Numbered from the whole stretch's first letter, positions 49,468 through 59,661 are shown. The stretch: 63,997 nt of DNA, filler included, from Lenisia limosa (GCA_001655205.1; 10 parts of 10 records of this genome joined end to end with filler, not necessarily neighbours in it); one strand, 5' to 3'. Numbers and translations: made by a program. Notes: generated from the letters alone by a model not told the origin.

Positions 49468-52400
49468 CTAGAATGATTCGACGAAATAGCGCTCATGGAG
49501 CTTCTCTCCGTACTTCTCCAGTTCCTCACCCTCAATACCCAGTTCAACACCGCAGGCAGACTAAACCGTCAGAATGACCACCAGTAGGCAACAAAAGGTA
49601 TCTTCTTGTCAGTTATACAAAAAAAAAAAATAAGGTAAAATTATGATATCTTTGGTGAGTAATGCCTGCTCACCTTGATAGAGGCGAAGACCTTCTCAGG
49701 GACTCCGAAGGAGACACCACAGTAGAAGATCTTGCAGTTGTCATGCTTGGCAATGTCGGCTGCAGCCTAGGCTGTTAGAAGGGGATGCAACAATGATTAA
49801 AGGGACAGTAATGCATTTGAAAATCAATTATAATGCCATTCCACACAACTGTCAAGAAAACCCTCTACAAACCTTAGGGTTCTTGGCCATGATGTCAGGG
49901 ATGGTGATGAACTCCTTTTGGTCATGGGAGAACGCGGTTTGCACGTCCGTCACAATTCCGTTCTTCTTGTACTCCTCCAGCTACACTTTTAGACTCGAAC
50001 TCTCTAAATATGGACACATGGTCGTAGTACTTGGCAGAGTCAGACCTCTTTTTTAAGCACGAAGTCCTTGTCGTTGTGGCGGCAGGCGTAATAGAACGTA
50101 CAAGGGCCCAGGACCTTGCCTGCTTTCTACAGCCGTCATATGGGATATGCTTAAGTTTAACAAAGAAAAGGACATATGGTGTGCTCCAGACCTTCTGTCC
50201 CTCACGCTCCTGAAGGAATGCGCGGAAGGCCGATACTCCGGTCCCGAGTCCGACAAGCATGACGGGGGCTGAGCAGTCGCTGGGAGGGGACAGGATCCCG
50301 GCATGGCGCTATGAGGTCAGACTTCAAGGTTTTGGTGTTAGTGTCATCCCTAAAGACGGATTGTCTTGATGCACACCTGGATAGGGATGGTGACCTCTCC
50401 GTCTTCGGGGTGCAGGTTGAACATGAAGTTGGTGCAAAGGCCTCTCTTCCAGTCGCCCTACTGTGTCAAGCGTCTCGAAACGCAAGAGCAGGCAAGTATT
50501 ACAATGATACCAAAGAACCCATCCAGATGAACACGTCGGAACAAAGTTTGGTGCATCCATATCTGGAACTCCACATTGGGCCAACCTTGGGGCTCTTCCA
50601 CATGTTGAGAACGGCCAGGAGTTGGACGTTGTCGGGGTTCATGAGGGGGGATGACGCCGAAGAGTACAGACGGGGGCTGTGGGGTGAGGCTTTTCACAAG
50701 TTTGTTTTTTTAAAAAAAAAGACTGATACTTTTTACTTGGAAACTGACTTCCCATACCGCATTTCAGGAAGGACAGTCAGGAGAATGTCGAAAGGAATGT
50801 CAGGGCAGTAGTGCAGGAGAATGTCAGCAACACTATGCGCCATGCTGTAGACTTTGTAAGCGTCTGAGGGGTCAGATTACTGAGAGGGAGAAACAAGCAA
50901 CTAGCATTGACGGACCTTCATTGCCCTCTTCAAGGAGATGCTTGATTGAGGCCTTGTGGTTGTCGTTGTCCGTGAAGTGCCACACGCAGGAGAGGAGTCC
51001 ACGGGTGCAGGCACTATAAACGTAAACACAGGAATGTTTAACAAAGCATGCCGTTTATCAGAGAATTCTCTACGTTTTTTTTAAAGGGAAGCCTATTTTG
51101 ACAACTCACCTAAAGAGGTCAACATGCTGCTCGAAGAGTTGTCCGACAGAGAGACGCTCGGGGATGTGGGACTCAACGTCGGCTAAGGGGTCAAACATGT
51201 CTTTGTTTTCAAAAAGCAAAGTCCGAAGTGCAAGGCATACTTGAGGTAGACTTAATATACAGACCCATATTGTAAGACAGGCCGTAGGCTTCAAGGAACT
51301 CCTCAACCTAAGCAGTGAGCACATTCGTTCAACAGTGGGAGTTATGAAGGACAAGGTGACACCCCCATACAGCCTTGCGAGGATTGCGGGGAAGGACCTT
51401 AAAGTGGTCTCCGGCAACGTATTTGGTCTTGAGTCCCGCAATGTCAAGGTCAAGGTAATGTACTTCTCTCTGAAAGGTTAAAAAAGGCATGACATACCAG
51501 TCACAAAATTTGTTTACGGTATACATATCACATGTATTTGTTTCCCTAGATTTCTAATGTATATTATTTCTCTTGTTCAAAAATAAAAAACACAGACCTC
51601 GTAGTCGGCAGGGGTCCAGAGTTCGTTCTTAGCCACCTTTGCAAGCTCGAAGCCCTTGGGGCACACGTAGTCAAATGCACAGCCCTTCCTGAGAGGGGGG
51701 TAAAATGATTGATGCTAGTGTGGGAAGCGATACTCTTTCAAAAAGAGTTGAGCATGACTTTGGTGGAATGGCACGTAAAAAACCAGCCTACTTGGCAAGG
51801 CCCATGGTGACAGAGTATCTTGGGAGAGGAGGGCGGTCCACGAACACATTCTCATCTTTGAGTACTCCGATGCGCCAAGGGTCGAAAGCCGCACGATGCT
51901 AGGTGGTCAGGGTTGCCTTGGTTTCAAATTCTCGAAAAAGATAAAGATGAAGAAAAAAAACAAGGCATACAGCGCCTGGTGCAAGAGCGTCACCACATTG
52001 GACGTCCCGGACCATTACGCAGCCGGACTCGACCAGCTTGGAGTGGAGTTTCTACAAGGTCATAATGTGGTCGTCACATTTACCCTTTTTCACATATTCA
52101 ACTCTGCAATAATATATCATATCGTTATGTATGTCCAGTATGTGTATAAACTGATTCCTCCACCTACCTTGGCGGGGCGACAGAAGTTGGTGAAGCTTTT
52201 GGATCCGAGGCCGAAGACGGAGGCCTTGAGGCCCATCAGCTCAGGGGTGCTGCGGTTCAGGTCTTCCCAGAACTCCAGGGAATTCAGAGGGAACTGAAGT
52301 GTGAAAACTAAGCGGCTTTGCCACCGAACGGAGTTCATTCCTTTGTTGGTTATTGTGGCCTTTTTGTGGGGTTAACATAATAAATCAAAATATCGCTCAC

Positions 52401-55400
52401 ATCGCCGTCACCGGTGGTAGCCATGACAAAGAGGGCAAGGGGAGGCTTTCCGGACTCCTTTCCTCTCTTGATCATCTCGACAAGCTTATCAAGACCGAAG
52501 CTGTCCATTGAGCTGTAGAGAACCTGAAGGAGGTGAAATTCGAATAAAAACAGGAAAGGGCAGCCTAACCTTGATGCCGTTGTTGAGGAGAAGATCCGCC
52601 TTGACGGCGGCGGCGGCGGCCTGAGCTGTTCCGCCGGTTGAGCCGAAGAGAACGGCAACTTCGCGACCATCAGCTGCTCCGATTTCATCAATTACCTGGG
52701 GGGGGGGGGNNNNNNNNNNNNNNNNNNNNNNNNNNNNNNNNNNNNNNNNNNNNNNNNNNNNNNNNNNNNNNNNNNNNNNNNNNNNNNNNNNNNNNNNNNN
52801 NNNNNNNNNNNNNNNNNNNNNNNNNNNNNNNNNNNNNNNNNNNNNNNNNNNNNNNNNNNNNNNNNNNNNNNNNNNNNNNNNNNNNNNNNNNNNNNNNNNN
52901 NNNNNNNNNNNNNNNNNNNNNNNNNNNNNNNNNNNNNNNNNNNNNNNNNNNNNNNNNNNNNNNNNNNNNNNCATGGGGCCAGCGGGTAAGATATATGTCT
53001 TACCCTTTTGTGTATTCATATACTATTTCAGATTTTAATTCTGATGTAAATGAGAGTTCACCGATTAAAGGTTTTAAACTATCAGAAATTCGTGATATTA
53101 CTGATTTCCCATTGGTTATCGAAAATACTAAGAAACAAGTTGGAATACATATTATTTTTAAAATTCCATGATCATAACGCCTAGAGCCGTCCCAAACAAT
53201 AAGAGTGAATGCAATTAAAAACGCACAGTATCACTTGTTAAATAGTGTGAAACAATGTAGCAAGGTGAGCAGAAGAAATACTATTCTTGAAATAATCGAA
53301 GAATCTTGTATGACAATATCTAACATAGAAATAAGAAATATAGAAAAAAGCAAAAGAACAAAAGAACAAACCTCGCGAGAGGCAAGGATGGTGAAGTCTT
53401 CGAGGTTGTTGATCTGGGCGTTGCACTTCTCAATTACCTATATAATAAGGGTGGCGACAGGGTTGACATACCTTGACTGCAGTGTCACGGCCGGCTTGCC
53501 ACATCTCCTTGAGAACTTCCTGCAAAGTCACATCAGTTCAGTTGGCTCAGTTCATTTAAGGCACTTACCTGGGTGGGAAGGTACTGGCAGGTGATAGCCG
53601 GAGAAGTCTCGTAGAGCTTGAGGGACTGTGAGAGGTTGTTGAGAGCCCCGACAAGAGCTGGTTTGTTCCATCCGTATGAGCCAAAGCACATTCCTAATCC
53701 GTCAATAAAGAAGAACCCACAGCATGTTGAAATAAGAAGAGAACAAAAAGGTAGTATCTGGTGTAATAATCGCGCCTACCGAGTCTATGCTTCGGAGAGA
53801 GCCCAGCAACGTAGTTCACAGCCTGGGCAATGGGTGGCATGACGGACTCATTGAGGCAAGGTGATCTGAAGGAAATGTCATAGCCTGACAGCAACATCGT
53901 ATCAAAATAGTGAGGAAGTGTGTGGCTAAAAAAGCCTAATCGTACCCAATAACGATGGCGGCGGCGTCAAGAACCTCGGTAGCGATGGTGGTAATGTGGC
54001 GGCGGGCGGCGTTAACAAGACGCACCTCTACACCAAGGGTTTGGGCACCGTCGGCAAAGGCCCCGGCCATGAGCTGTGTGGACTGGTACATGCTATCGTA
54101 GATGATGACAATCTTGGGGTTGACCTGGCCAGTGGTGAACAAGGGGAAGGTGAAAGGGGTGCTTGGACATTTATAAAAGAAGAAGAAGATAACTAACCAA
54201 AGTATTGACACTATTCACCATCACAGGGTCTGAGAGAGAAAAAAAGAGATACGATCACCAACCTTCTGATGGGCGTAGTCTGCATAGGCGGTGATGACTT
54301 CTCCAATGTGCTTTCTCCAAGACACACCGTGAGCAGTGAGAACCTGCGAGGTCAATAGGTGGTTTGTGATGAGGGGGACTCAACCTTCTTGATAGGCAAG
54401 TTGAGGGGGAGAACAGCGTCCAGGGTGCGGCGGATAGCGGCATCACAAGGCATCAGAATATTGGCCTGATTAGTCAGTCATGTCAAGGAGATCTTCACCG
54501 CCAATGCAGTACCCCTCCCTCACGTAGTACTCCTTCTGGAGAGCCATGATGGTCTCGACAGAGTGTTGGTCGTCCCAGAGACGGGAAGTTGCGAAGTGCT
54601 GTCCGAATCCGTCGTTGGAGTACAAGATGTTGTCGTAGGGAGACCAGGCCCATGCGGAGTCGGGCCAATGTGCACCGGGCGTGCTGACGAGATGCAGGGT
54701 TCTCTTACCAATGCAAAGAGGGGCGTCGGCAGTGAAGACCTGGGGGAATCAGTAGATAATGGAGGCAGAAGAATGATGAAACTAAAATTGATAAAATCAT
54801 TTCATAGAGGCTTACCTGCCACTTCCAGGTTGTCGTATCGTAGTTCTGTTCCATGGCACGCTTGCACGCCTCATTAGTCACCACCGTGATCTCGGGGTTG
54901 AGGGCCAAAAGATGGGGGAGACTGGAGGTGTGGTCTGTTGCGTAAGAAGAGGAGGATTTAATAACAAGAAAGCAACGCTAGCTCACCAGGCTCAGCGTGG
55001 TTGAGGAGGACGTACTTCAACTTGGCAATTTCAATATGATTTGAAATGTTCTCAAGGAGGGTTTGGGCAAAGGGGTATTTCACCTGGATGTTGTTAATCA
55101 GCGCATGACAATATGAAAACCAACGGTATCGATGAGAGTTGGCTGCTCGTCAAGAATCAGGTAAGCGTTGTAGGAAGAACCATTTTTGGTTTCATATCCA
55201 TGGAATTCAGTTACATTCCAATCCTAAAAAAAAACATGAGGACTGAATTGAAAAGCATAAAGAGCAGTAGTCCTTCAAACAGCCGGGTCTCCCCAACATA
55301 CCACTGCTCCAACCCAGTGAACATCAGGAGCCATTTGGGTCTCTTGAGGGACGTCAGGATTCATTGGTCTGACATCTCTAGTGACGGCAGGGGCCGATCC

Positions 55401-55692
55401 AGTGAAGCCAAATGAGTTGATTTTGTAACTAGGAGCACTGAAGCTGTAACTAGGGAAACAGTATTGGAAAAACTTACGATAGAGAGGAATCAATGACTTT
55501 CAATCCATTCTCGACAGTGCTCTTGCCCCATAACTTCTGAGCTTCATCTTCAGTGGGCCTCATATCGCTAAAAGAGAAAATAATAAGAATGATTCGTGAA
55601 TGATTCGCAATCATGAGAAAAAGTCTTGAATGGGAGAGAGAAGAAACGTGACAAACACAACAGTTTACCCACGCAATAGACTCCTGTGCCAT
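49468..55692 (-). CDS. Flavodiiron protein (A-type flavoprotein) fused to a CPR-like diflavin NAD(P)H oxidoreductase
   Basis: FDP core [37 protein letters not shown]; then [86 protein letters not shown]. Confidence 0.92.
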
Positions 55693-57138: not shown

Positions 57139-59547
57139 CTAGAAGCCAATGGAGGTCATAGCACTGAGGCAATGAGTTGCATCCTGGCGCATTTTGGCGT
57201 CAGGGTGGCGTGAGGCGAGGTTCACAAGGTCCTGTTAATCATGTTAATCATGACAATAATGGACATGGGAGTAGAACAGCCATCAACTGAGGTAATTCAC
57301 CCAATCCTGTATTGATCTCACCTTGAGGCCTGAGCGTGCTCTGAGGAGAGGAAGCATATCAGCTCCAAGACAGAAGATCATGTCGCCTTGATGGTCAGAG
57401 ACCCAATGAGAAGAAGAATGCGAAGAGCTAAAGCCAACCTAGAACGGCGTAACACAGACAGATGACTTCGGGGTCAGTCTCCTCGGCACGGGCAATGTCG
57501 TCGCCGAAGATGTTCGAAATGAAGTCCAGCATCTGGGAGGTCAGCATATTCACAAGCCAAGACTTCTTGCTGCTAATGTGGCAGACAAAACCCGGATGCA
57601 AACCGTGTTAGCATTGCTCTTGAGGAAGGTCTTAAAGTTAGCGGAGTTGTCCATGCAGATGAGGAGAGCGACGAAGGCCTCAAGAATGCCTCGACGAAGT
57701 TCATTGAAAAACTCAAAGTCACCAGTGTCGATGGTGGTCACCNNNNNNNNNNNNNNNNNNNNNNNNNNNNNNNNNNNNNNNNNNNNNNNNNNNNNNNNNN
57801 NNNNNNNNNNNNNNNNNNNNNNNNNNNNNNNNNNNNNNNNNNNNNNNNNNNNNGAGCATGGGAAGGGAGTCCTGTAGGTAGCGCTCAAAGTGCATGCCCA
57901 ATGCGGTGCAGAGGTCACCAAAACACGACAAGAGAGCAGGCTTGACGTCGGCCGGGAGGGTCTGAAAAGAGTTAAAAAAAAAGAGAATTCAGAATACTGA
58001 GTGCTTCAAAAAATGCGACAAACCTTGTCCTGGAGACTTCTGAGGAGTGACTGTACGATGCGGTCTGAGATAGCGGACGACTTGACGCCAACAGCAAGGA
58101 CTATATCTCCGATGGTTCCGACAGCAACTGTGCAGACCTGGGGGGTTACGGGGGGAAGTGTCAAACTCGACCAACGGAAGGGGCACTGGTCATGTTGAGG
58201 GCCTCAAGAAGGGGGTCAGCCACGTGCATGAGGTACTTTTCGAATCCTTCCTGAATTGTCAATGAAAACAATCACAAGAGGCATCATATTGGTGGGATAT
58301 CTAGCAATGAGAAATAAAAAATTAGGTTGTATTGGTATAAACAGGACATGAACGCCTGGATACAGTGAATACACCACACCGCCCACCTTGGCGGCATTGG
58401 CAACGGCGCCGACGACAGTCAGGGCGTCCTCCTGTACCTCAGAGGCTTTCTCGCTCAGAATGCGGATCATGAGGGTCTACATGTGTTAACAGTGGGAACA
58501 AAACCAAGCTTCAAAATCCGATAGAACCCATTACGCGATGTCCCCACCATGATAGCATCAGCGTTGACGGCCAGAAGGCTGCTCTCAGACTCCTCCATTC
58601 GGCGACCGATGTTGAATAGCACGTTGCAGAGCTGCGAGACAATCTCGATCTTGGCGGTCTTTTCGGCTTGGGTGGTGACGGGGTGTTTGGACGCGGCATC
58701 AAGACGCTGCAGGGTGAGCCAATGATCGACAACAAGGAAAGGAAGTCGTAATTTCTTGGCTTACTTGGAGGACAGCAGTGATGATGGGGGTGAGAATGGG
58801 GATTTTCGAATCAGGGCATTGGGCAATCATCTCACAGAATGCAACGTAAGCGGCAACCCTGGGATAATGAAAATAGTTGAAGTGAGCAAGATAATGAAAA
58901 TGATTGTGTTACATCTGCCCTGACCAGAACCGGGCCCACCTGAGGCTGGAGCGCCCACTTGGGTTCTCGTCAGCGTCGGGGCGAACAGCGGTCTCAAAGA
59001 GGGCCTGATGGTAATCAAAAGTAATCAAAAGAGTGAATGTTCCGCAGTACGTATCACCATCTCTTTTTAGCCATTTCACTTACCTGGAGGTAGGTCTGCG
59101 CGAAGGGGTCCAAAATTTGGCGGTCGTTGGCAAAGCCGGCAGCGAGGTTGTTAATGGCACCACAAATACGAACGGCAACCTGTGTGTAACGGGACGTGGT
59201 TTTAATATAAATTAGATTGTTTCGTTTCGAAATTTCGCTCCCAAGAGAGAGAGGGGGGGGGGGCAAATACACAAGAAAAAATGGTAACGCTAAAGTTTGT
59301 GGATATAAAGTGCCCACTACCTTAGGGGCTTCTTTCAAGCCTGACAGAAGAGCATTGGCAAGGTCCTGACGGGTGAGGGGAAATCACAAAATTGAGGGGC
59401 AAGAGCAAATAAAACAGCCCCAACCATAAGAAGGTTCTGAGGGATGGCAGAGGCATGGTACTCGCAGATCTGGCCGAGGGTCCAACCGGCAGTGTCACGG
59501 ACATTGGCGTGAGCATCGACAAGAAGGTGCAAGATGACTGGAAGTGC
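57139..59547 (-). CDS. KPNB1: Importin subunit beta-1, C-terminal half (5' lost at linker)
   Basis: HEAT exons NVRDTAGWTLGQICE, VQEDALTVVGAVANA, VCTVAVGTIGDI, DVKPALLSCFGDLCTALG, FNELRRGILEAF. Confidence 0.9.
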
Positions 59548-59661
59548 CTGGGGGGGGGGGGNNNNNNNNNNNNNNNNNNNNNNNNNNNNNNNNNNNNNNN
59601 NNNNNTTAATTAATTAANNNNNNNNNNNNNNNNNNNNNNNNNNNNNNNNNNNNNNNNNNNN

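What the first reader, a model, noticed from the sequence alone, without database searches (positions are those of the whole stretch)
49468..55692. Flavodiiron O2/NO reductase fused to a complete cytochrome-P450-reductase-type diflavin module
Seen: one spliceable reading frame carrying a metallo-beta-lactamase diiron domain with intact-looking ligand motifs ([23 protein letters not shown]) and its FMN flavodoxin domain. It continues into a second CPR-type flavodoxin ([22 protein letters not shown]), an FAD domain ([20 protein letters not shown]) and an NAD(P)H domain (GLGTG, YYACRH, FYCG, terminal RYFVESF). The join LASRE|VIDEIG is phase-compatible across a sized gap (52710-52971), not a linker. 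Known: FDPs usually need separate electron donors, and some are fused to flavin-reductase or rubredoxin/oxidoreductase modules; CPR modules are fused to pyruvate:ferredoxin oxidoreductase (PNO) and to [FeFe]-hydrogenases in anaerobic protists. Inference: a self-sufficient NAD(P)H-FAD-FMN-FMN-Fe2 oxidase or NO reductase built by the same CPR-fusion logic. I cannot verify whether this exact architecture has been described.
Basis: partly seen in the sequence, partly recalled or inferred. Interest (0 to 1): 0.85.

Follow-up and report, generated by a model that had tools for sequence, protein, structure and literature searches.

The report
Flavodiiron oxygen reductase fused to CPR
An intron-rich gene of an anaerobic protist encodes one 1059-residue protein that joins an oxygen-scavenging flavodiiron enzyme to a complete cytochrome-P450-reductase-type NAD(P)H module, a domain combination missing from the published flavodiiron classes and seen so far only here and in the breviate Pygsuia.

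Summary
On the minus strand, 31 exons (ATG 55563, stop 49468-49470) give an unbroken 1059-aa frame, and all 30 introns are GT..AG. One polyA-RNA contig of 2821 nt covers exons 3 to 31. Its coordinates leave no extra base between exon 13 (ends 53372) and exon 14 (starts 52695). The N gap therefore lies inside an intron, and LASRE|VIDEIG is a real in-frame splice.

The only end-to-end relative found is a 1083-aa Pygsuia biforma transcriptome protein (46% identity) with the same architecture and the same N- and C-termini. The flavodiiron half keeps all seven diiron ligands and groups with the Giardia O2-scavenging enzyme. The reductase half matches mammalian CPR across its FMN, FAD and NADPH domains.

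The published flavodiiron classes A-H use only rubredoxin, NROR or flavin-reductase modules, so this is a new variant.

The most likely function is a self-sufficient, water-forming NAD(P)H:O2 oxidoreductase. The inferred electron path is FAD, then FMN, then FMN, then the diiron site.

The fusion also supports a published but untested proposal that soluble CPR donates electrons to the Giardia enzyme.

Three things stay open: NADH versus NADPH, NO activity, and the exact 5' end.

The parts
49468..55563 (-). Whole coding region: 31 exons, 1059 codons plus stop (49468-49470); 30 GT..AG introns of 34-138 nt, except the gap intron
   Evidence: Gene model assembled from the RNA-contig joints and checked. 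The ORF is uninterrupted.
55335..55563 (-). N-terminal extension, aa 1-63 (exon 1 plus the first part of exon 2). It starts acidic and holds the conserved motif AP-x-YK-x-x-SFGFTG.
   Evidence: Aligned to the N-terminus of Pygsuia P0001. Absent from class A flavodiiron proteins. 7 K+R against 8 D+E, so not presequence-like. RNA contig 2 splices 55437 to about 55478.
54263..55334 (-). Flavodiiron metallo-beta-lactamase-like domain, aa 64-305 (exons 2-8). Ligands: H136, E138, D140, H141, H203, D222, H283.
   Evidence: Alignment with Giardia and bacterial flavodiiron proteins. PDB 2q9u E 7.7e-20 for exon 6. ODP Pfam domain on the orthologue.
53472..54124 (-). Flavodiiron flavodoxin (FMN) domain, aa 306-451 (exons 9-12), with DSMYQST, GSPCLNE and FGSYGW.
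   Evidence: Pfam Flavodoxin_1 on exon 9, 27.2 bits against a cutoff of 25. Alignment.
53372..53437 (-). Exon 13: linker, aa 452-473, ending ..LASRE
   Evidence: Predicted as a continuation of the last flavodiiron helix in the orthologue model (low confidence).
52696..53371 (-). Intron 13, which contains the assembly gap (N at 52710-52971), an AT-rich repeat-flanked stretch, and a C-run plus AG acceptor.
   Evidence: GT at 53371-53370 and AG at 52697-52696. RNA depth 0 over 52871-53270. DNA-contig depth about 175-193 against about 32 over the bins 52871-53270.
51792..52695 (-). CPR-type FMN (flavodoxin) domain, aa 474-660 (exons 14-18), with [16 protein letters not shown] and FGLGSKSF.
   Evidence: The orthologue region matches rat CPR 21-163. 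Pfam Flavodoxin_1 on exon 16 is weak.
50377..51688 (-). Connecting and FAD-binding domain, aa 661-896 (exons 19-26), with [19 protein letters not shown] and RGLCTNF.
   Evidence: Pfam FAD_binding_1 on two exons and at E 3.5e-45 on the orthologue..
49471..50308 (-). NAD(P)H-binding domain, aa 897-1059 (exons 27-31), with [26 protein letters not shown] and a C-terminal RYFVESF.
   Evidence: Exon 27 hits the NADPH domains of NOS, CPR and SiR-FP. alignment..
55564..55692 (-). Possible 5' extension: an in-frame ATG at 55692 with no stop before 55563 (43 extra, hydrophobic and Cys-rich residues). A pyrimidine tract plus AG lies just before 55570.
   Evidence: Frame-0 open segment 55701-55477 and sequence. 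Not conserved in Pygsuia, whose ORF starts at MTRPTE. RNA evidence reaches only about 55545.

Best explanation
This is a single nuclear gene for a self-sufficient, probably cytosolic, three-flavin flavodiiron oxidase.

The inferred electron path is as follows. NAD(P)H delivers a hydride to the FAD of the C-terminal CPR-type module. Electrons pass one at a time to that module's FMN domain. That domain swings, as in CPR, NOS and P450-BM3, to reduce the FMN of the flavodiiron flavodoxin domain. This FMN then feeds the diiron site, which in flavodiiron proteins belongs to the partner subunit of a head-to-tail dimer. At the diiron site O2 is reduced to water. The enzyme would therefore be an H2O-forming NAD(P)H:O2 oxidoreductase that protects an anaerobe from oxygen.

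Shown: one spliced transcript, one reading frame, intact cofactor and ligand motifs, and an orthologue with the same architecture.

Inferred: the electron path, O2 rather than NO as substrate, the coenzyme, the dimer, and the location.
For: One RNA contig of 2821 nt covers exons 3-31 with GT..AG joints. It leaves no extra bases between exon 13 and exon 14, and RNA depth is zero in the readable part of the gap intron (arithmetic).

The ORF is 1059 aa and unbroken.

Pygsuia biforma P0001 (1083 aa) aligns over 2-1059 against 3-1083 at 46% identity. It shares the start M(T)RPTE.EA and the end RY.VESF. Its Pfam domains are ODP, two Flavodoxin_1 and FAD_binding_1.

All seven diiron ligands and the FMN motifs are kept. 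The residues K109 (DTVK) and Y318 (SMYQST) are shared with the Giardia enzyme. The Giardia enzyme is the closest solved structure and is described as an O2 scavenger (PMC4989108, PMC6856725).

In the tree of flavodiiron cores, the window and Pygsuia pair at 100/100. They group at 90/84 with Giardia.

The reductase half of the orthologue matches CPR over FMN, FAD and NADPH domains at E about 1e-63.

Self-sufficient flavodiiron fusions are known to work as H2O-forming NAD(P)H oxidases (class F; PMC12528894, PMC6033852).
Against: There is no biochemistry.

FMN-to-FMN transfer between two flavodoxin-like domains has no characterised precedent in flavodiiron proteins.

At the positions I recall as binding the NADPH 2'-phosphate in rat CPR (S596, R597, K602, Y604), the alignment gives S, H, F, T. 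NADPH preference is therefore doubtful.

The O2-versus-NO argument rests on two second-sphere residues. I know their role only from memory and from the title of Goncalves et al. 2014, which could not be opened.

The predicted structure of the orthologue is confident only for the flavodiiron half (pLDDT above 90). It is poor for the reductase half because the alignment was shallow.

The RNA evidence is an assembler's contig, not single reads, and the decisive joint was not printed.
Confidence: 0.75

Rival explanations
1. The fused protein is the same, but its physiological substrate is nitric oxide. It would be an NAD(P)H:NO reductase making N2O, rather than an O2 reductase.
For: Flavodiiron proteins as a family reduce O2 or NO. 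The closest solved relatives of exon 6 include enzymes named nitric oxide reductase (1ycf, E. coli flavorubredoxin). Some multidomain flavodiiron proteins are reported to turn over NO (PMC12528894 on the C. difficile and S. wolfei enzymes).
Against: The nearest characterised relative is the Giardia O2-scavenging enzyme. K109 and Y318 match Giardia and not the E. coli-type residues (plus recalled literature). The class F enzyme of Histomonas is strictly O2-specific (PMC12528894).
Confidence: 0.15
2. These are two adjacent genes, a class A flavodiiron protein and a separate CPR. They appear joined only because of a chimeric RNA assembly, read-through, or a mis-scaffolded gap.
For: The genome has an unread gap of estimated length exactly between the two halves. 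Contigs can be chimeric. The tool itself warns that a contig across two genes does not prove a single transcript.
Against: The join is a canonical GT..AG splice that keeps the frame, with zero extra bases. There is no RNA depth in the readable intron. Exon 13 has no stop and exon 14 has no start codon. An independent transcriptome of another species, Pygsuia, encodes the same continuous protein with a homologous linker.
Confidence: 0.03
3. The fusion is real, but the CPR module mainly serves other acceptors, such as general diaphorase, quinone or nitro-compound reduction, or cytochrome b5. Alternatively, the flavodiiron domain acts as an O2-dependent switch rather than the terminal oxidase.
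For: CPR-type modules are promiscuous donors (PMC6397501). Three of the four residues I recall as binding the NADPH 2'-phosphate in rat CPR are replaced (alignment), so the module is divergent. It is only 25-28% identical to the long diflavin proteins found.
Against: Covalent fusion conserved at 46% identity across two species, with all catalytic ligands of both halves kept, argues that the two halves work together.
Confidence: 0.07

Closest known systems
Pygsuia biforma predicted protein GCRY01000505.1.p1 (EukProt EP00033, P0001)
   Same: End-to-end homologue (46% identity, 1083 aa). It has the same N-terminal extension, flavodiiron core, linker, CPR-type module and C-terminal RY.VESF.
   Different: It comes from a different species. 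It is known only as an unannotated transcriptome ORF, so its introns are unknown. The searchable literature does not describe it as a fusion.
Giardia intestinalis class A flavodiiron protein (PDB 2q9u)
   Same: It is the closest solved structure and a tree neighbour of the flavodiiron half. It shares the diiron ligands and the K and Y second-sphere residues.
   Different: It is a 414-aa core only, with no fused reductase. Its donor is only hypothesised, as soluble CPR (PMC6397501).
Class F flavodiiron proteins (Trichomonas, Histomonas, C. difficile)
   Same: [quoted passage not shown]
   Different: Their added modules are a short rubredoxin plus an NADH:rubredoxin oxidoreductase. Here the module is a diflavin FMN-FAD-NAD(P)H reductase, and the orthologue has no Pfam hit to rubredoxin or NROR families.
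Class C flavodiiron proteins (cyanobacteria, algae, plants)
   Same: The core has a C-terminal NAD(P)H-dependent flavin module.
   Different: That module is a small flavin-reductase-like domain (PMC6033852), not a three-domain CPR.
CPR/CysJ fusions of anaerobic protists (PNO; CysJ-fused [FeFe]-hydrogenases) and P450-BM3 or NOS
   Same: A catalytic domain is followed by a C-terminal CPR-type module. The hydrogenase fusions are reported in Pygsuia, Trichomonas and Stygiella and are predicted to be cytosolic (PMC4989108).
   Different: The catalytic partner here is a flavodiiron core, so the acceptor of the CPR FMN is another FMN rather than a heme or an Fe-S cluster. Sequence kinship of this module to those fusions was not shown.
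Microsomal NADPH-cytochrome P450 reductase
   Same: It is the best PDB match across the FMN, connecting/FAD and NADPH domains. The catalytic Ser and Cys and the C-terminal aromatic residue are kept.
   Different: There is no N-terminal membrane anchor, because a flavodiiron core takes its place. The terminal aromatic residue is F, not W-S. Several residues that bind the NADPH 2'-phosphate are replaced.

Membership tests
Flavodiiron proteins (FDP, A-type flavoproteins) | Metallo-beta-lactamase-like domain with the diiron ligand set H-x-E-x-D-H ... H ... D ... H | tested here: met
   H136, E138, D140, H141, H203, D222 and H283 align with the ligands of Giardia and bacterial members. The ODP Pfam domain is present on the orthologue.
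Flavodiiron proteins (FDP, A-type flavoproteins) | Flavodoxin-like FMN domain directly after the diiron domain | tested here: met
   Pfam Flavodoxin_1 on exon 9 scores above the cutoff. The motifs DSMYQST, GSPCLNE and FGSYGW are aligned. pLDDT is above 90 in the orthologue model.
Flavodiiron proteins (FDP, A-type flavoproteins) | Head-to-tail dimer and O2 or NO reductase activity | not testable with these tools
   This needs protein chemistry.
Flavodiiron classes B-H (published multidomain classes) | The extra module is a rubredoxin, short rubredoxin, NADH:rubredoxin oxidoreductase or flavin-reductase-like domain | tested here: not met
   The class modules are listed in PMC6033852, and classes B-H are still cited as current in PMC12528894. 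The orthologue shows only ODP, Lactamase_B, Flavodoxin_1 and FAD_binding_1. The 586 C-terminal residues are fully accounted for by a CPR-type module.
Diflavin reductases of the CPR type | FMN flavodoxin domain, connecting/FAD domain and NAD(P)H domain in this order, with their binding motifs | tested here: met
   Motifs are located. The orthologue half aligns to rat CPR 21-574. FAD_binding_1 scores E 3.5e-45. Exon 27 hits NADPH domains.
Diflavin reductases of the CPR type | NADPH specificity (2'-phosphate-binding Ser/Arg/Lys/Tyr) | tested here: inconclusive
   The alignment gives S-H...F..T where I recall rat CPR having S596, R597, K602 and Y604. The residue roles are from memory.
Microsomal CPR proper | N-terminal membrane anchor and delivery of electrons to cytochrome P450 | tested here: not met
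   The module starts at aa 474, directly after the flavodiiron linker. It therefore works like a CPR module but is not a microsomal CPR.

The most novel reading that the evidence does not exclude
This protein and its Pygsuia orthologue found a ninth architectural class of flavodiiron proteins, in which a CPR-type diflavin reductase is the built-in donor and an FMN-to-FMN step feeds the diiron site.

Read as a Rosetta-stone fusion, it indicates that free CPR-like diflavin reductases are the missing physiological electron donors of the class A flavodiiron proteins of Giardia and other protists. PMC6397501 proposes this for Giardia, but it has never been tested.

The same flavodiiron clade also carries fusions to PFO, to ferredoxin and to tandem flavodoxins. 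This suggests repeated independent solutions to one donor problem.
Probability: 0.45. Interest if true: 0.72.

Novelty: new variant of a known kind. Interest (0 to 1): 0.62.

Why it matters
Flavodiiron proteins are the main soluble O2 and NO scavengers of anaerobes, including parasites such as Giardia, Trichomonas and Entamoeba. For the protist class A enzymes the natural electron donor is still a matter of proposal.

A natural fusion of the Giardia-type core to a complete CPR module, conserved in two species, gives a directly testable donor hypothesis. It also offers a compact single-polypeptide NAD(P)H oxidase with three flavins and a diiron site for mechanistic work. It extends the A-H classification.

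It also shows that the CPR-fusion habit of anaerobic protists, already known for PNO and CysJ-hydrogenases, reaches oxygen defence.

Tried and rejected
- Pfam on single exons gave only weak or sub-threshold hits because the exons are 16-72 aa. The spliced model could not be passed to the database tools by reference, so the homologue P0001 served as its proxy.
- The reductase half of P0001 searched alone found only relatives at 25-28% identity (P450-BM3-like, nitrate reductase/SiR fusions). The idea that the module is a close copy of a known fusion partner is therefore unsupported.
- A junction-spanning fragment query (P0001:400-640) found nothing.
- The search for related loci with P0001 in metagenome contigs and genome contigs found nothing.
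- A degenerate DNA pattern for [12 protein letters not shown] in metagenome contigs found nothing.
- Aligning the 31 exon translations to P0001 with MAFFT misplaced many exons and was dropped.
- The ESM Atlas has no large cluster combining ODP with FAD_binding_1.
- The structure prediction of P0001 was confident only for the flavodiiron half, so no inter-domain geometry was drawn from it.
- Goncalves et al. 2014 could not be opened.
- A mitochondrial-type presequence was considered and rejected, because the N-terminus is acidic.
- No tRNA genes lie in the piece.


Full report
**What is in the sequence**

The region is eukaryotic and densely interrupted. Minus-strand reading frames between stops carry short stretches of flavodiiron and diflavin-reductase sequence.

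Public runs of the same study hold the locus. X2 is a DNA-like run holding 0.99-1.00 of the sampled words. X1 is a polyA RNA run holding 0.36 of them, about the share that is exon.

I laid both runs on 49471-55470. One X1 contig of 2821 nt lay on the minus strand in many pieces, and every listed joint had CT..AC on the plus strand, which is GT..AG on the gene strand. From the 15 printed joints, the listed pieces with their contig coordinates, and the sequence itself, I built a 31-exon model.

- The start ATG is at 55563 and the stop at 49468-49470.
- The frame is unbroken over 1059 codons.
- All 30 introns are GT..AG. They are 34-138 nt long, except the one that holds the gap.

**The gap**

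The operators asked that continuity across 52710-52971 be tested first.

In one search, contig positions 878-1002 lie on 53568-53692 (exon 11, shifted by one ambiguous base). Positions 1118-1244 lie on 52567-52693 (exon 14, shifted by two ambiguous bases). The 115 positions between them are exactly the last 47 nt of exon 12 (53519-53472), the 66 nt of exon 13 (53437-53372) and the first 2 nt of exon 14.

The transcript therefore joins 53372 directly to 52695. The skipped stretch begins with GT (53371-53370). It ends with a run of C followed by AG (52697-52696), and the frame reads ..LASRE|VIDEIG...

X1 depth is 0 over 52871-53270, against roughly 9-20 in most exon-bearing bins on either side. 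There is thus no sign of a 3' end, a new 5' end or a hidden exon.

DNA contigs stop at the gap. Short high-depth contigs (about 175-193 against about 32) flank it. The gap is therefore a repeat inside an intron.

One caveat: the joint row itself was among the 14 not printed, so this is coordinate arithmetic on an assembled contig, not a count of reads.

**An independent check on the fusion**

A phmmer search with exon 6 (72 aa) against 1.84 billion representatives gave as best hit a 1083-aa protein, P0001.

The spliced model aligns to it from residue 2 to 1059 (3 to 1083 in P0001). The alignment scores 46% identity and 993 bits. It includes the start (MRPTEDEA against MTRPTEMEA), a conserved N-terminal motif (AP-x-YK-x-x-SFGFTG), the linker, and the end (RYFVESF against RYHVESF).

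P0001 is a complete ORF from the Pygsuia biforma transcriptome in EukProt. Its Pfam domains are ODP/Lactamase_B, two Flavodoxin_1 and FAD_binding_1.

Two species therefore encode the same continuous protein. Together with the in-frame canonical splice, this makes the two-gene or chimera reading very unlikely.

**The flavodiiron half**

Exon 6 alone matches the Giardia A-type flavoprotein structure 2q9u at E 7.7e-20. The Moorella and Desulfovibrio enzymes and E. coli flavorubredoxin follow.

In an alignment with Giardia, Endomicrobium and metagenomic members, several features are in place.
- All diiron ligands are present: H136, E138, D140, H141, H203, D222 and H283.
- The FMN motifs of the flavodoxin domain are present.
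- The window and Pygsuia share with Giardia a Lys after DTV (K109) and a Tyr in the FMN phosphate loop (Y318). Several bacterial members in the alignment have Trp at the second position.

From memory, and from the title of Goncalves et al. 2014 cited in PMC12528894, these two positions tune O2 against NO preference. I could not open that paper.

In a tree of 43 flavodiiron cores, the window and Pygsuia pair at 100/100. They group at 90/84 with Giardia. They sit in a 99/99 clade that also holds flavodiiron cores fused to PFO and to 2Fe-2S ferredoxin domains. This agrees with PMC4989108 and PMC6397501, which place the Pygsuia flavodiiron protein with Giardia, Spironucleus, trichomonads and Stygiella.

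**The reductase half**

The motifs for FMN, FAD and NAD(P)H binding are all present and were mapped.
- FMN: [24 protein letters not shown].
- FAD: [16 protein letters not shown].
- NAD(P)H: [19 protein letters not shown].
- The C-terminus ends in an aromatic residue.

The orthologue's half (485-1083) matches rat and human NADPH-cytochrome P450 reductase at E about 1e-63 over residues 21-574. NOS reductase (1e-40), SiR-FP (6e-36), P450-BM3 (about 1e-30 for the classic reductase-domain entries) and MSR (5e-25) score lower. Exon 27 of the window itself hits the NADPH domains of NOS, CPR and SiR-FP.

The module is divergent. It is only 25-28% identical to the long diflavin proteins that search returned.

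At the positions I recall as binding the NADPH 2'-phosphate in rat CPR, the alignment shows S, H, F, T instead of S, R, K, Y. The coenzyme is therefore open.

**How it most likely works**

By analogy with CPR, NOS and P450-BM3, and with flavodiiron structures, the path would be as follows. This is established knowledge applied by inference.
1. NAD(P)H reduces the FAD.
2. The FAD reduces the module's FMN.
3. The mobile FMN domain docks on the flavodiiron flavodoxin domain and reduces its FMN.
4. That FMN reduces the diiron site of the partner subunit of a head-to-tail dimer.
5. O2 is reduced there to water.

The N-terminus is acidic, so a cytosolic location is likely. The same location is predicted for the CysJ-fused hydrogenases of Pygsuia (PMC4989108).

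The AlphaFold model of P0001 is confident for residues 61-460 only, so I draw no inter-domain geometry from it.

**Comparison with what is known**

The published classification (A-H) lists only rubredoxin, short rubredoxin, NROR and flavin-reductase-like modules (PMC6033852). A 2025 paper still cites classes B-H (PMC12528894).

Searches combining flavodiiron with P450 reductase, CysJ, diflavin, Pygsuia or flavoprotein found no description of this fusion.

PMC4989108 calls the Stygiella flavodiiron-ferredoxin fusion unique. It does not mention a CPR fusion in Pygsuia.

PMC6397501 proposes, without a test, that soluble CPR feeds the flavodiiron protein in Giardia. The present fusion is the kind of evidence that supports such a pairing.

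Among 5.8 billion proteins, only P0001 showed the architecture. The Atlas, the metagenome scans and the genome scans added none. All of these searches have stated limits, and I could not query InterPro.

**Surroundings**

Upstream on the same strand (57500-59561) lie HEAT-repeat exons. Their best, weak, PDB matches are importin beta-1 residues 416-443. That fits a nuclear chromosome.

No tRNA genes lie in the piece.

The organism's name is coded. The closest relative being a breviate, and the xenic-culture style of the libraries, suggest another breviate. That is a guess.

**Verdict**

The finding is a new architectural variant of a known enzyme family, shared with one unannotated orthologue. 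Its biochemistry is still to be shown.

Noticed in passing
L001:1-3118 (Logan contig of SRR22387828): Another eukaryotic relative of the flavodiiron half (41% identity to model aa 29-459, with short introns). On this contig it is preceded by two tandem flavodoxin-like domains and a low-complexity linker. This looks like a different Fld-Fld-flavodiiron fusion, although the 5' end of the first flavodoxin is cut by the contig edge. It also has an extension before the flavodiiron core, starting SAPDF.. where the window has SAPSY..; the likeness is by eye only and was not scored.
   Followed up: partly
P0151-P0159, P0154/P0156/P0157, P0076/P0134: Flavodiiron cores of the same clade occur fused to whole pyruvate:ferredoxin oxidoreductases (1250-1880 aa, one from Barthelona sp. 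PCE) and to N-terminal 2Fe-2S ferredoxin domains. Cores from a neighbouring clade of the tree are joined to Fer2 plus FNR-like modules (about 760 aa). This suggests several independent donor fusions.
   Followed up: partly
window 51535-51583 (inside intron 51470-51597): The DNA-contig word depth jumps to about 3650 against about 32 around it, and many contigs break here. This is a very high-copy short repeat sitting in an intron of the gene.
   Followed up: no
window 52972-53371: The readable part of the gap intron is AT-rich. In the bins 52871-53270 the summed DNA-contig depth is about 175-193, with short contigs at 53041-53127. The assembly gap is therefore probably caused by a dispersed repeat.
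   Followed up: no
window 55335-55563: A 63-aa N-terminal extension with the motif AP-x-YK-x-x-SFGFTG is conserved between the window and Pygsuia and absent from class A flavodiiron proteins. It is predicted to be disordered in the orthologue model. Its role is unknown; it could be a docking or regulatory peptide.
   Followed up: partly
It would add 43 hydrophobic, Cys-rich residues that Pygsuia lacks. A pyrimidine tract plus AG just before 55570 could instead mark a 5'-UTR intron. The RNA contig stops at about 55545.
   Followed up: partly
window 57500-59561, minus strand: The upstream neighbour has HEAT-repeat exons. Their best, weak, matches are importin beta-1 residues 416-443 (E 0.012-0.03). 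It is probably an importin-beta gene, interrupted by two N gaps.
   Followed up: partly
window 49468-55563: There are thirty spliceosomal introns in a 3.2-kb coding sequence, many of them 34-80 nt long. This is a very high intron density for a gene whose flavodiiron half is usually regarded as laterally acquired from prokaryotes.
   Followed up: no
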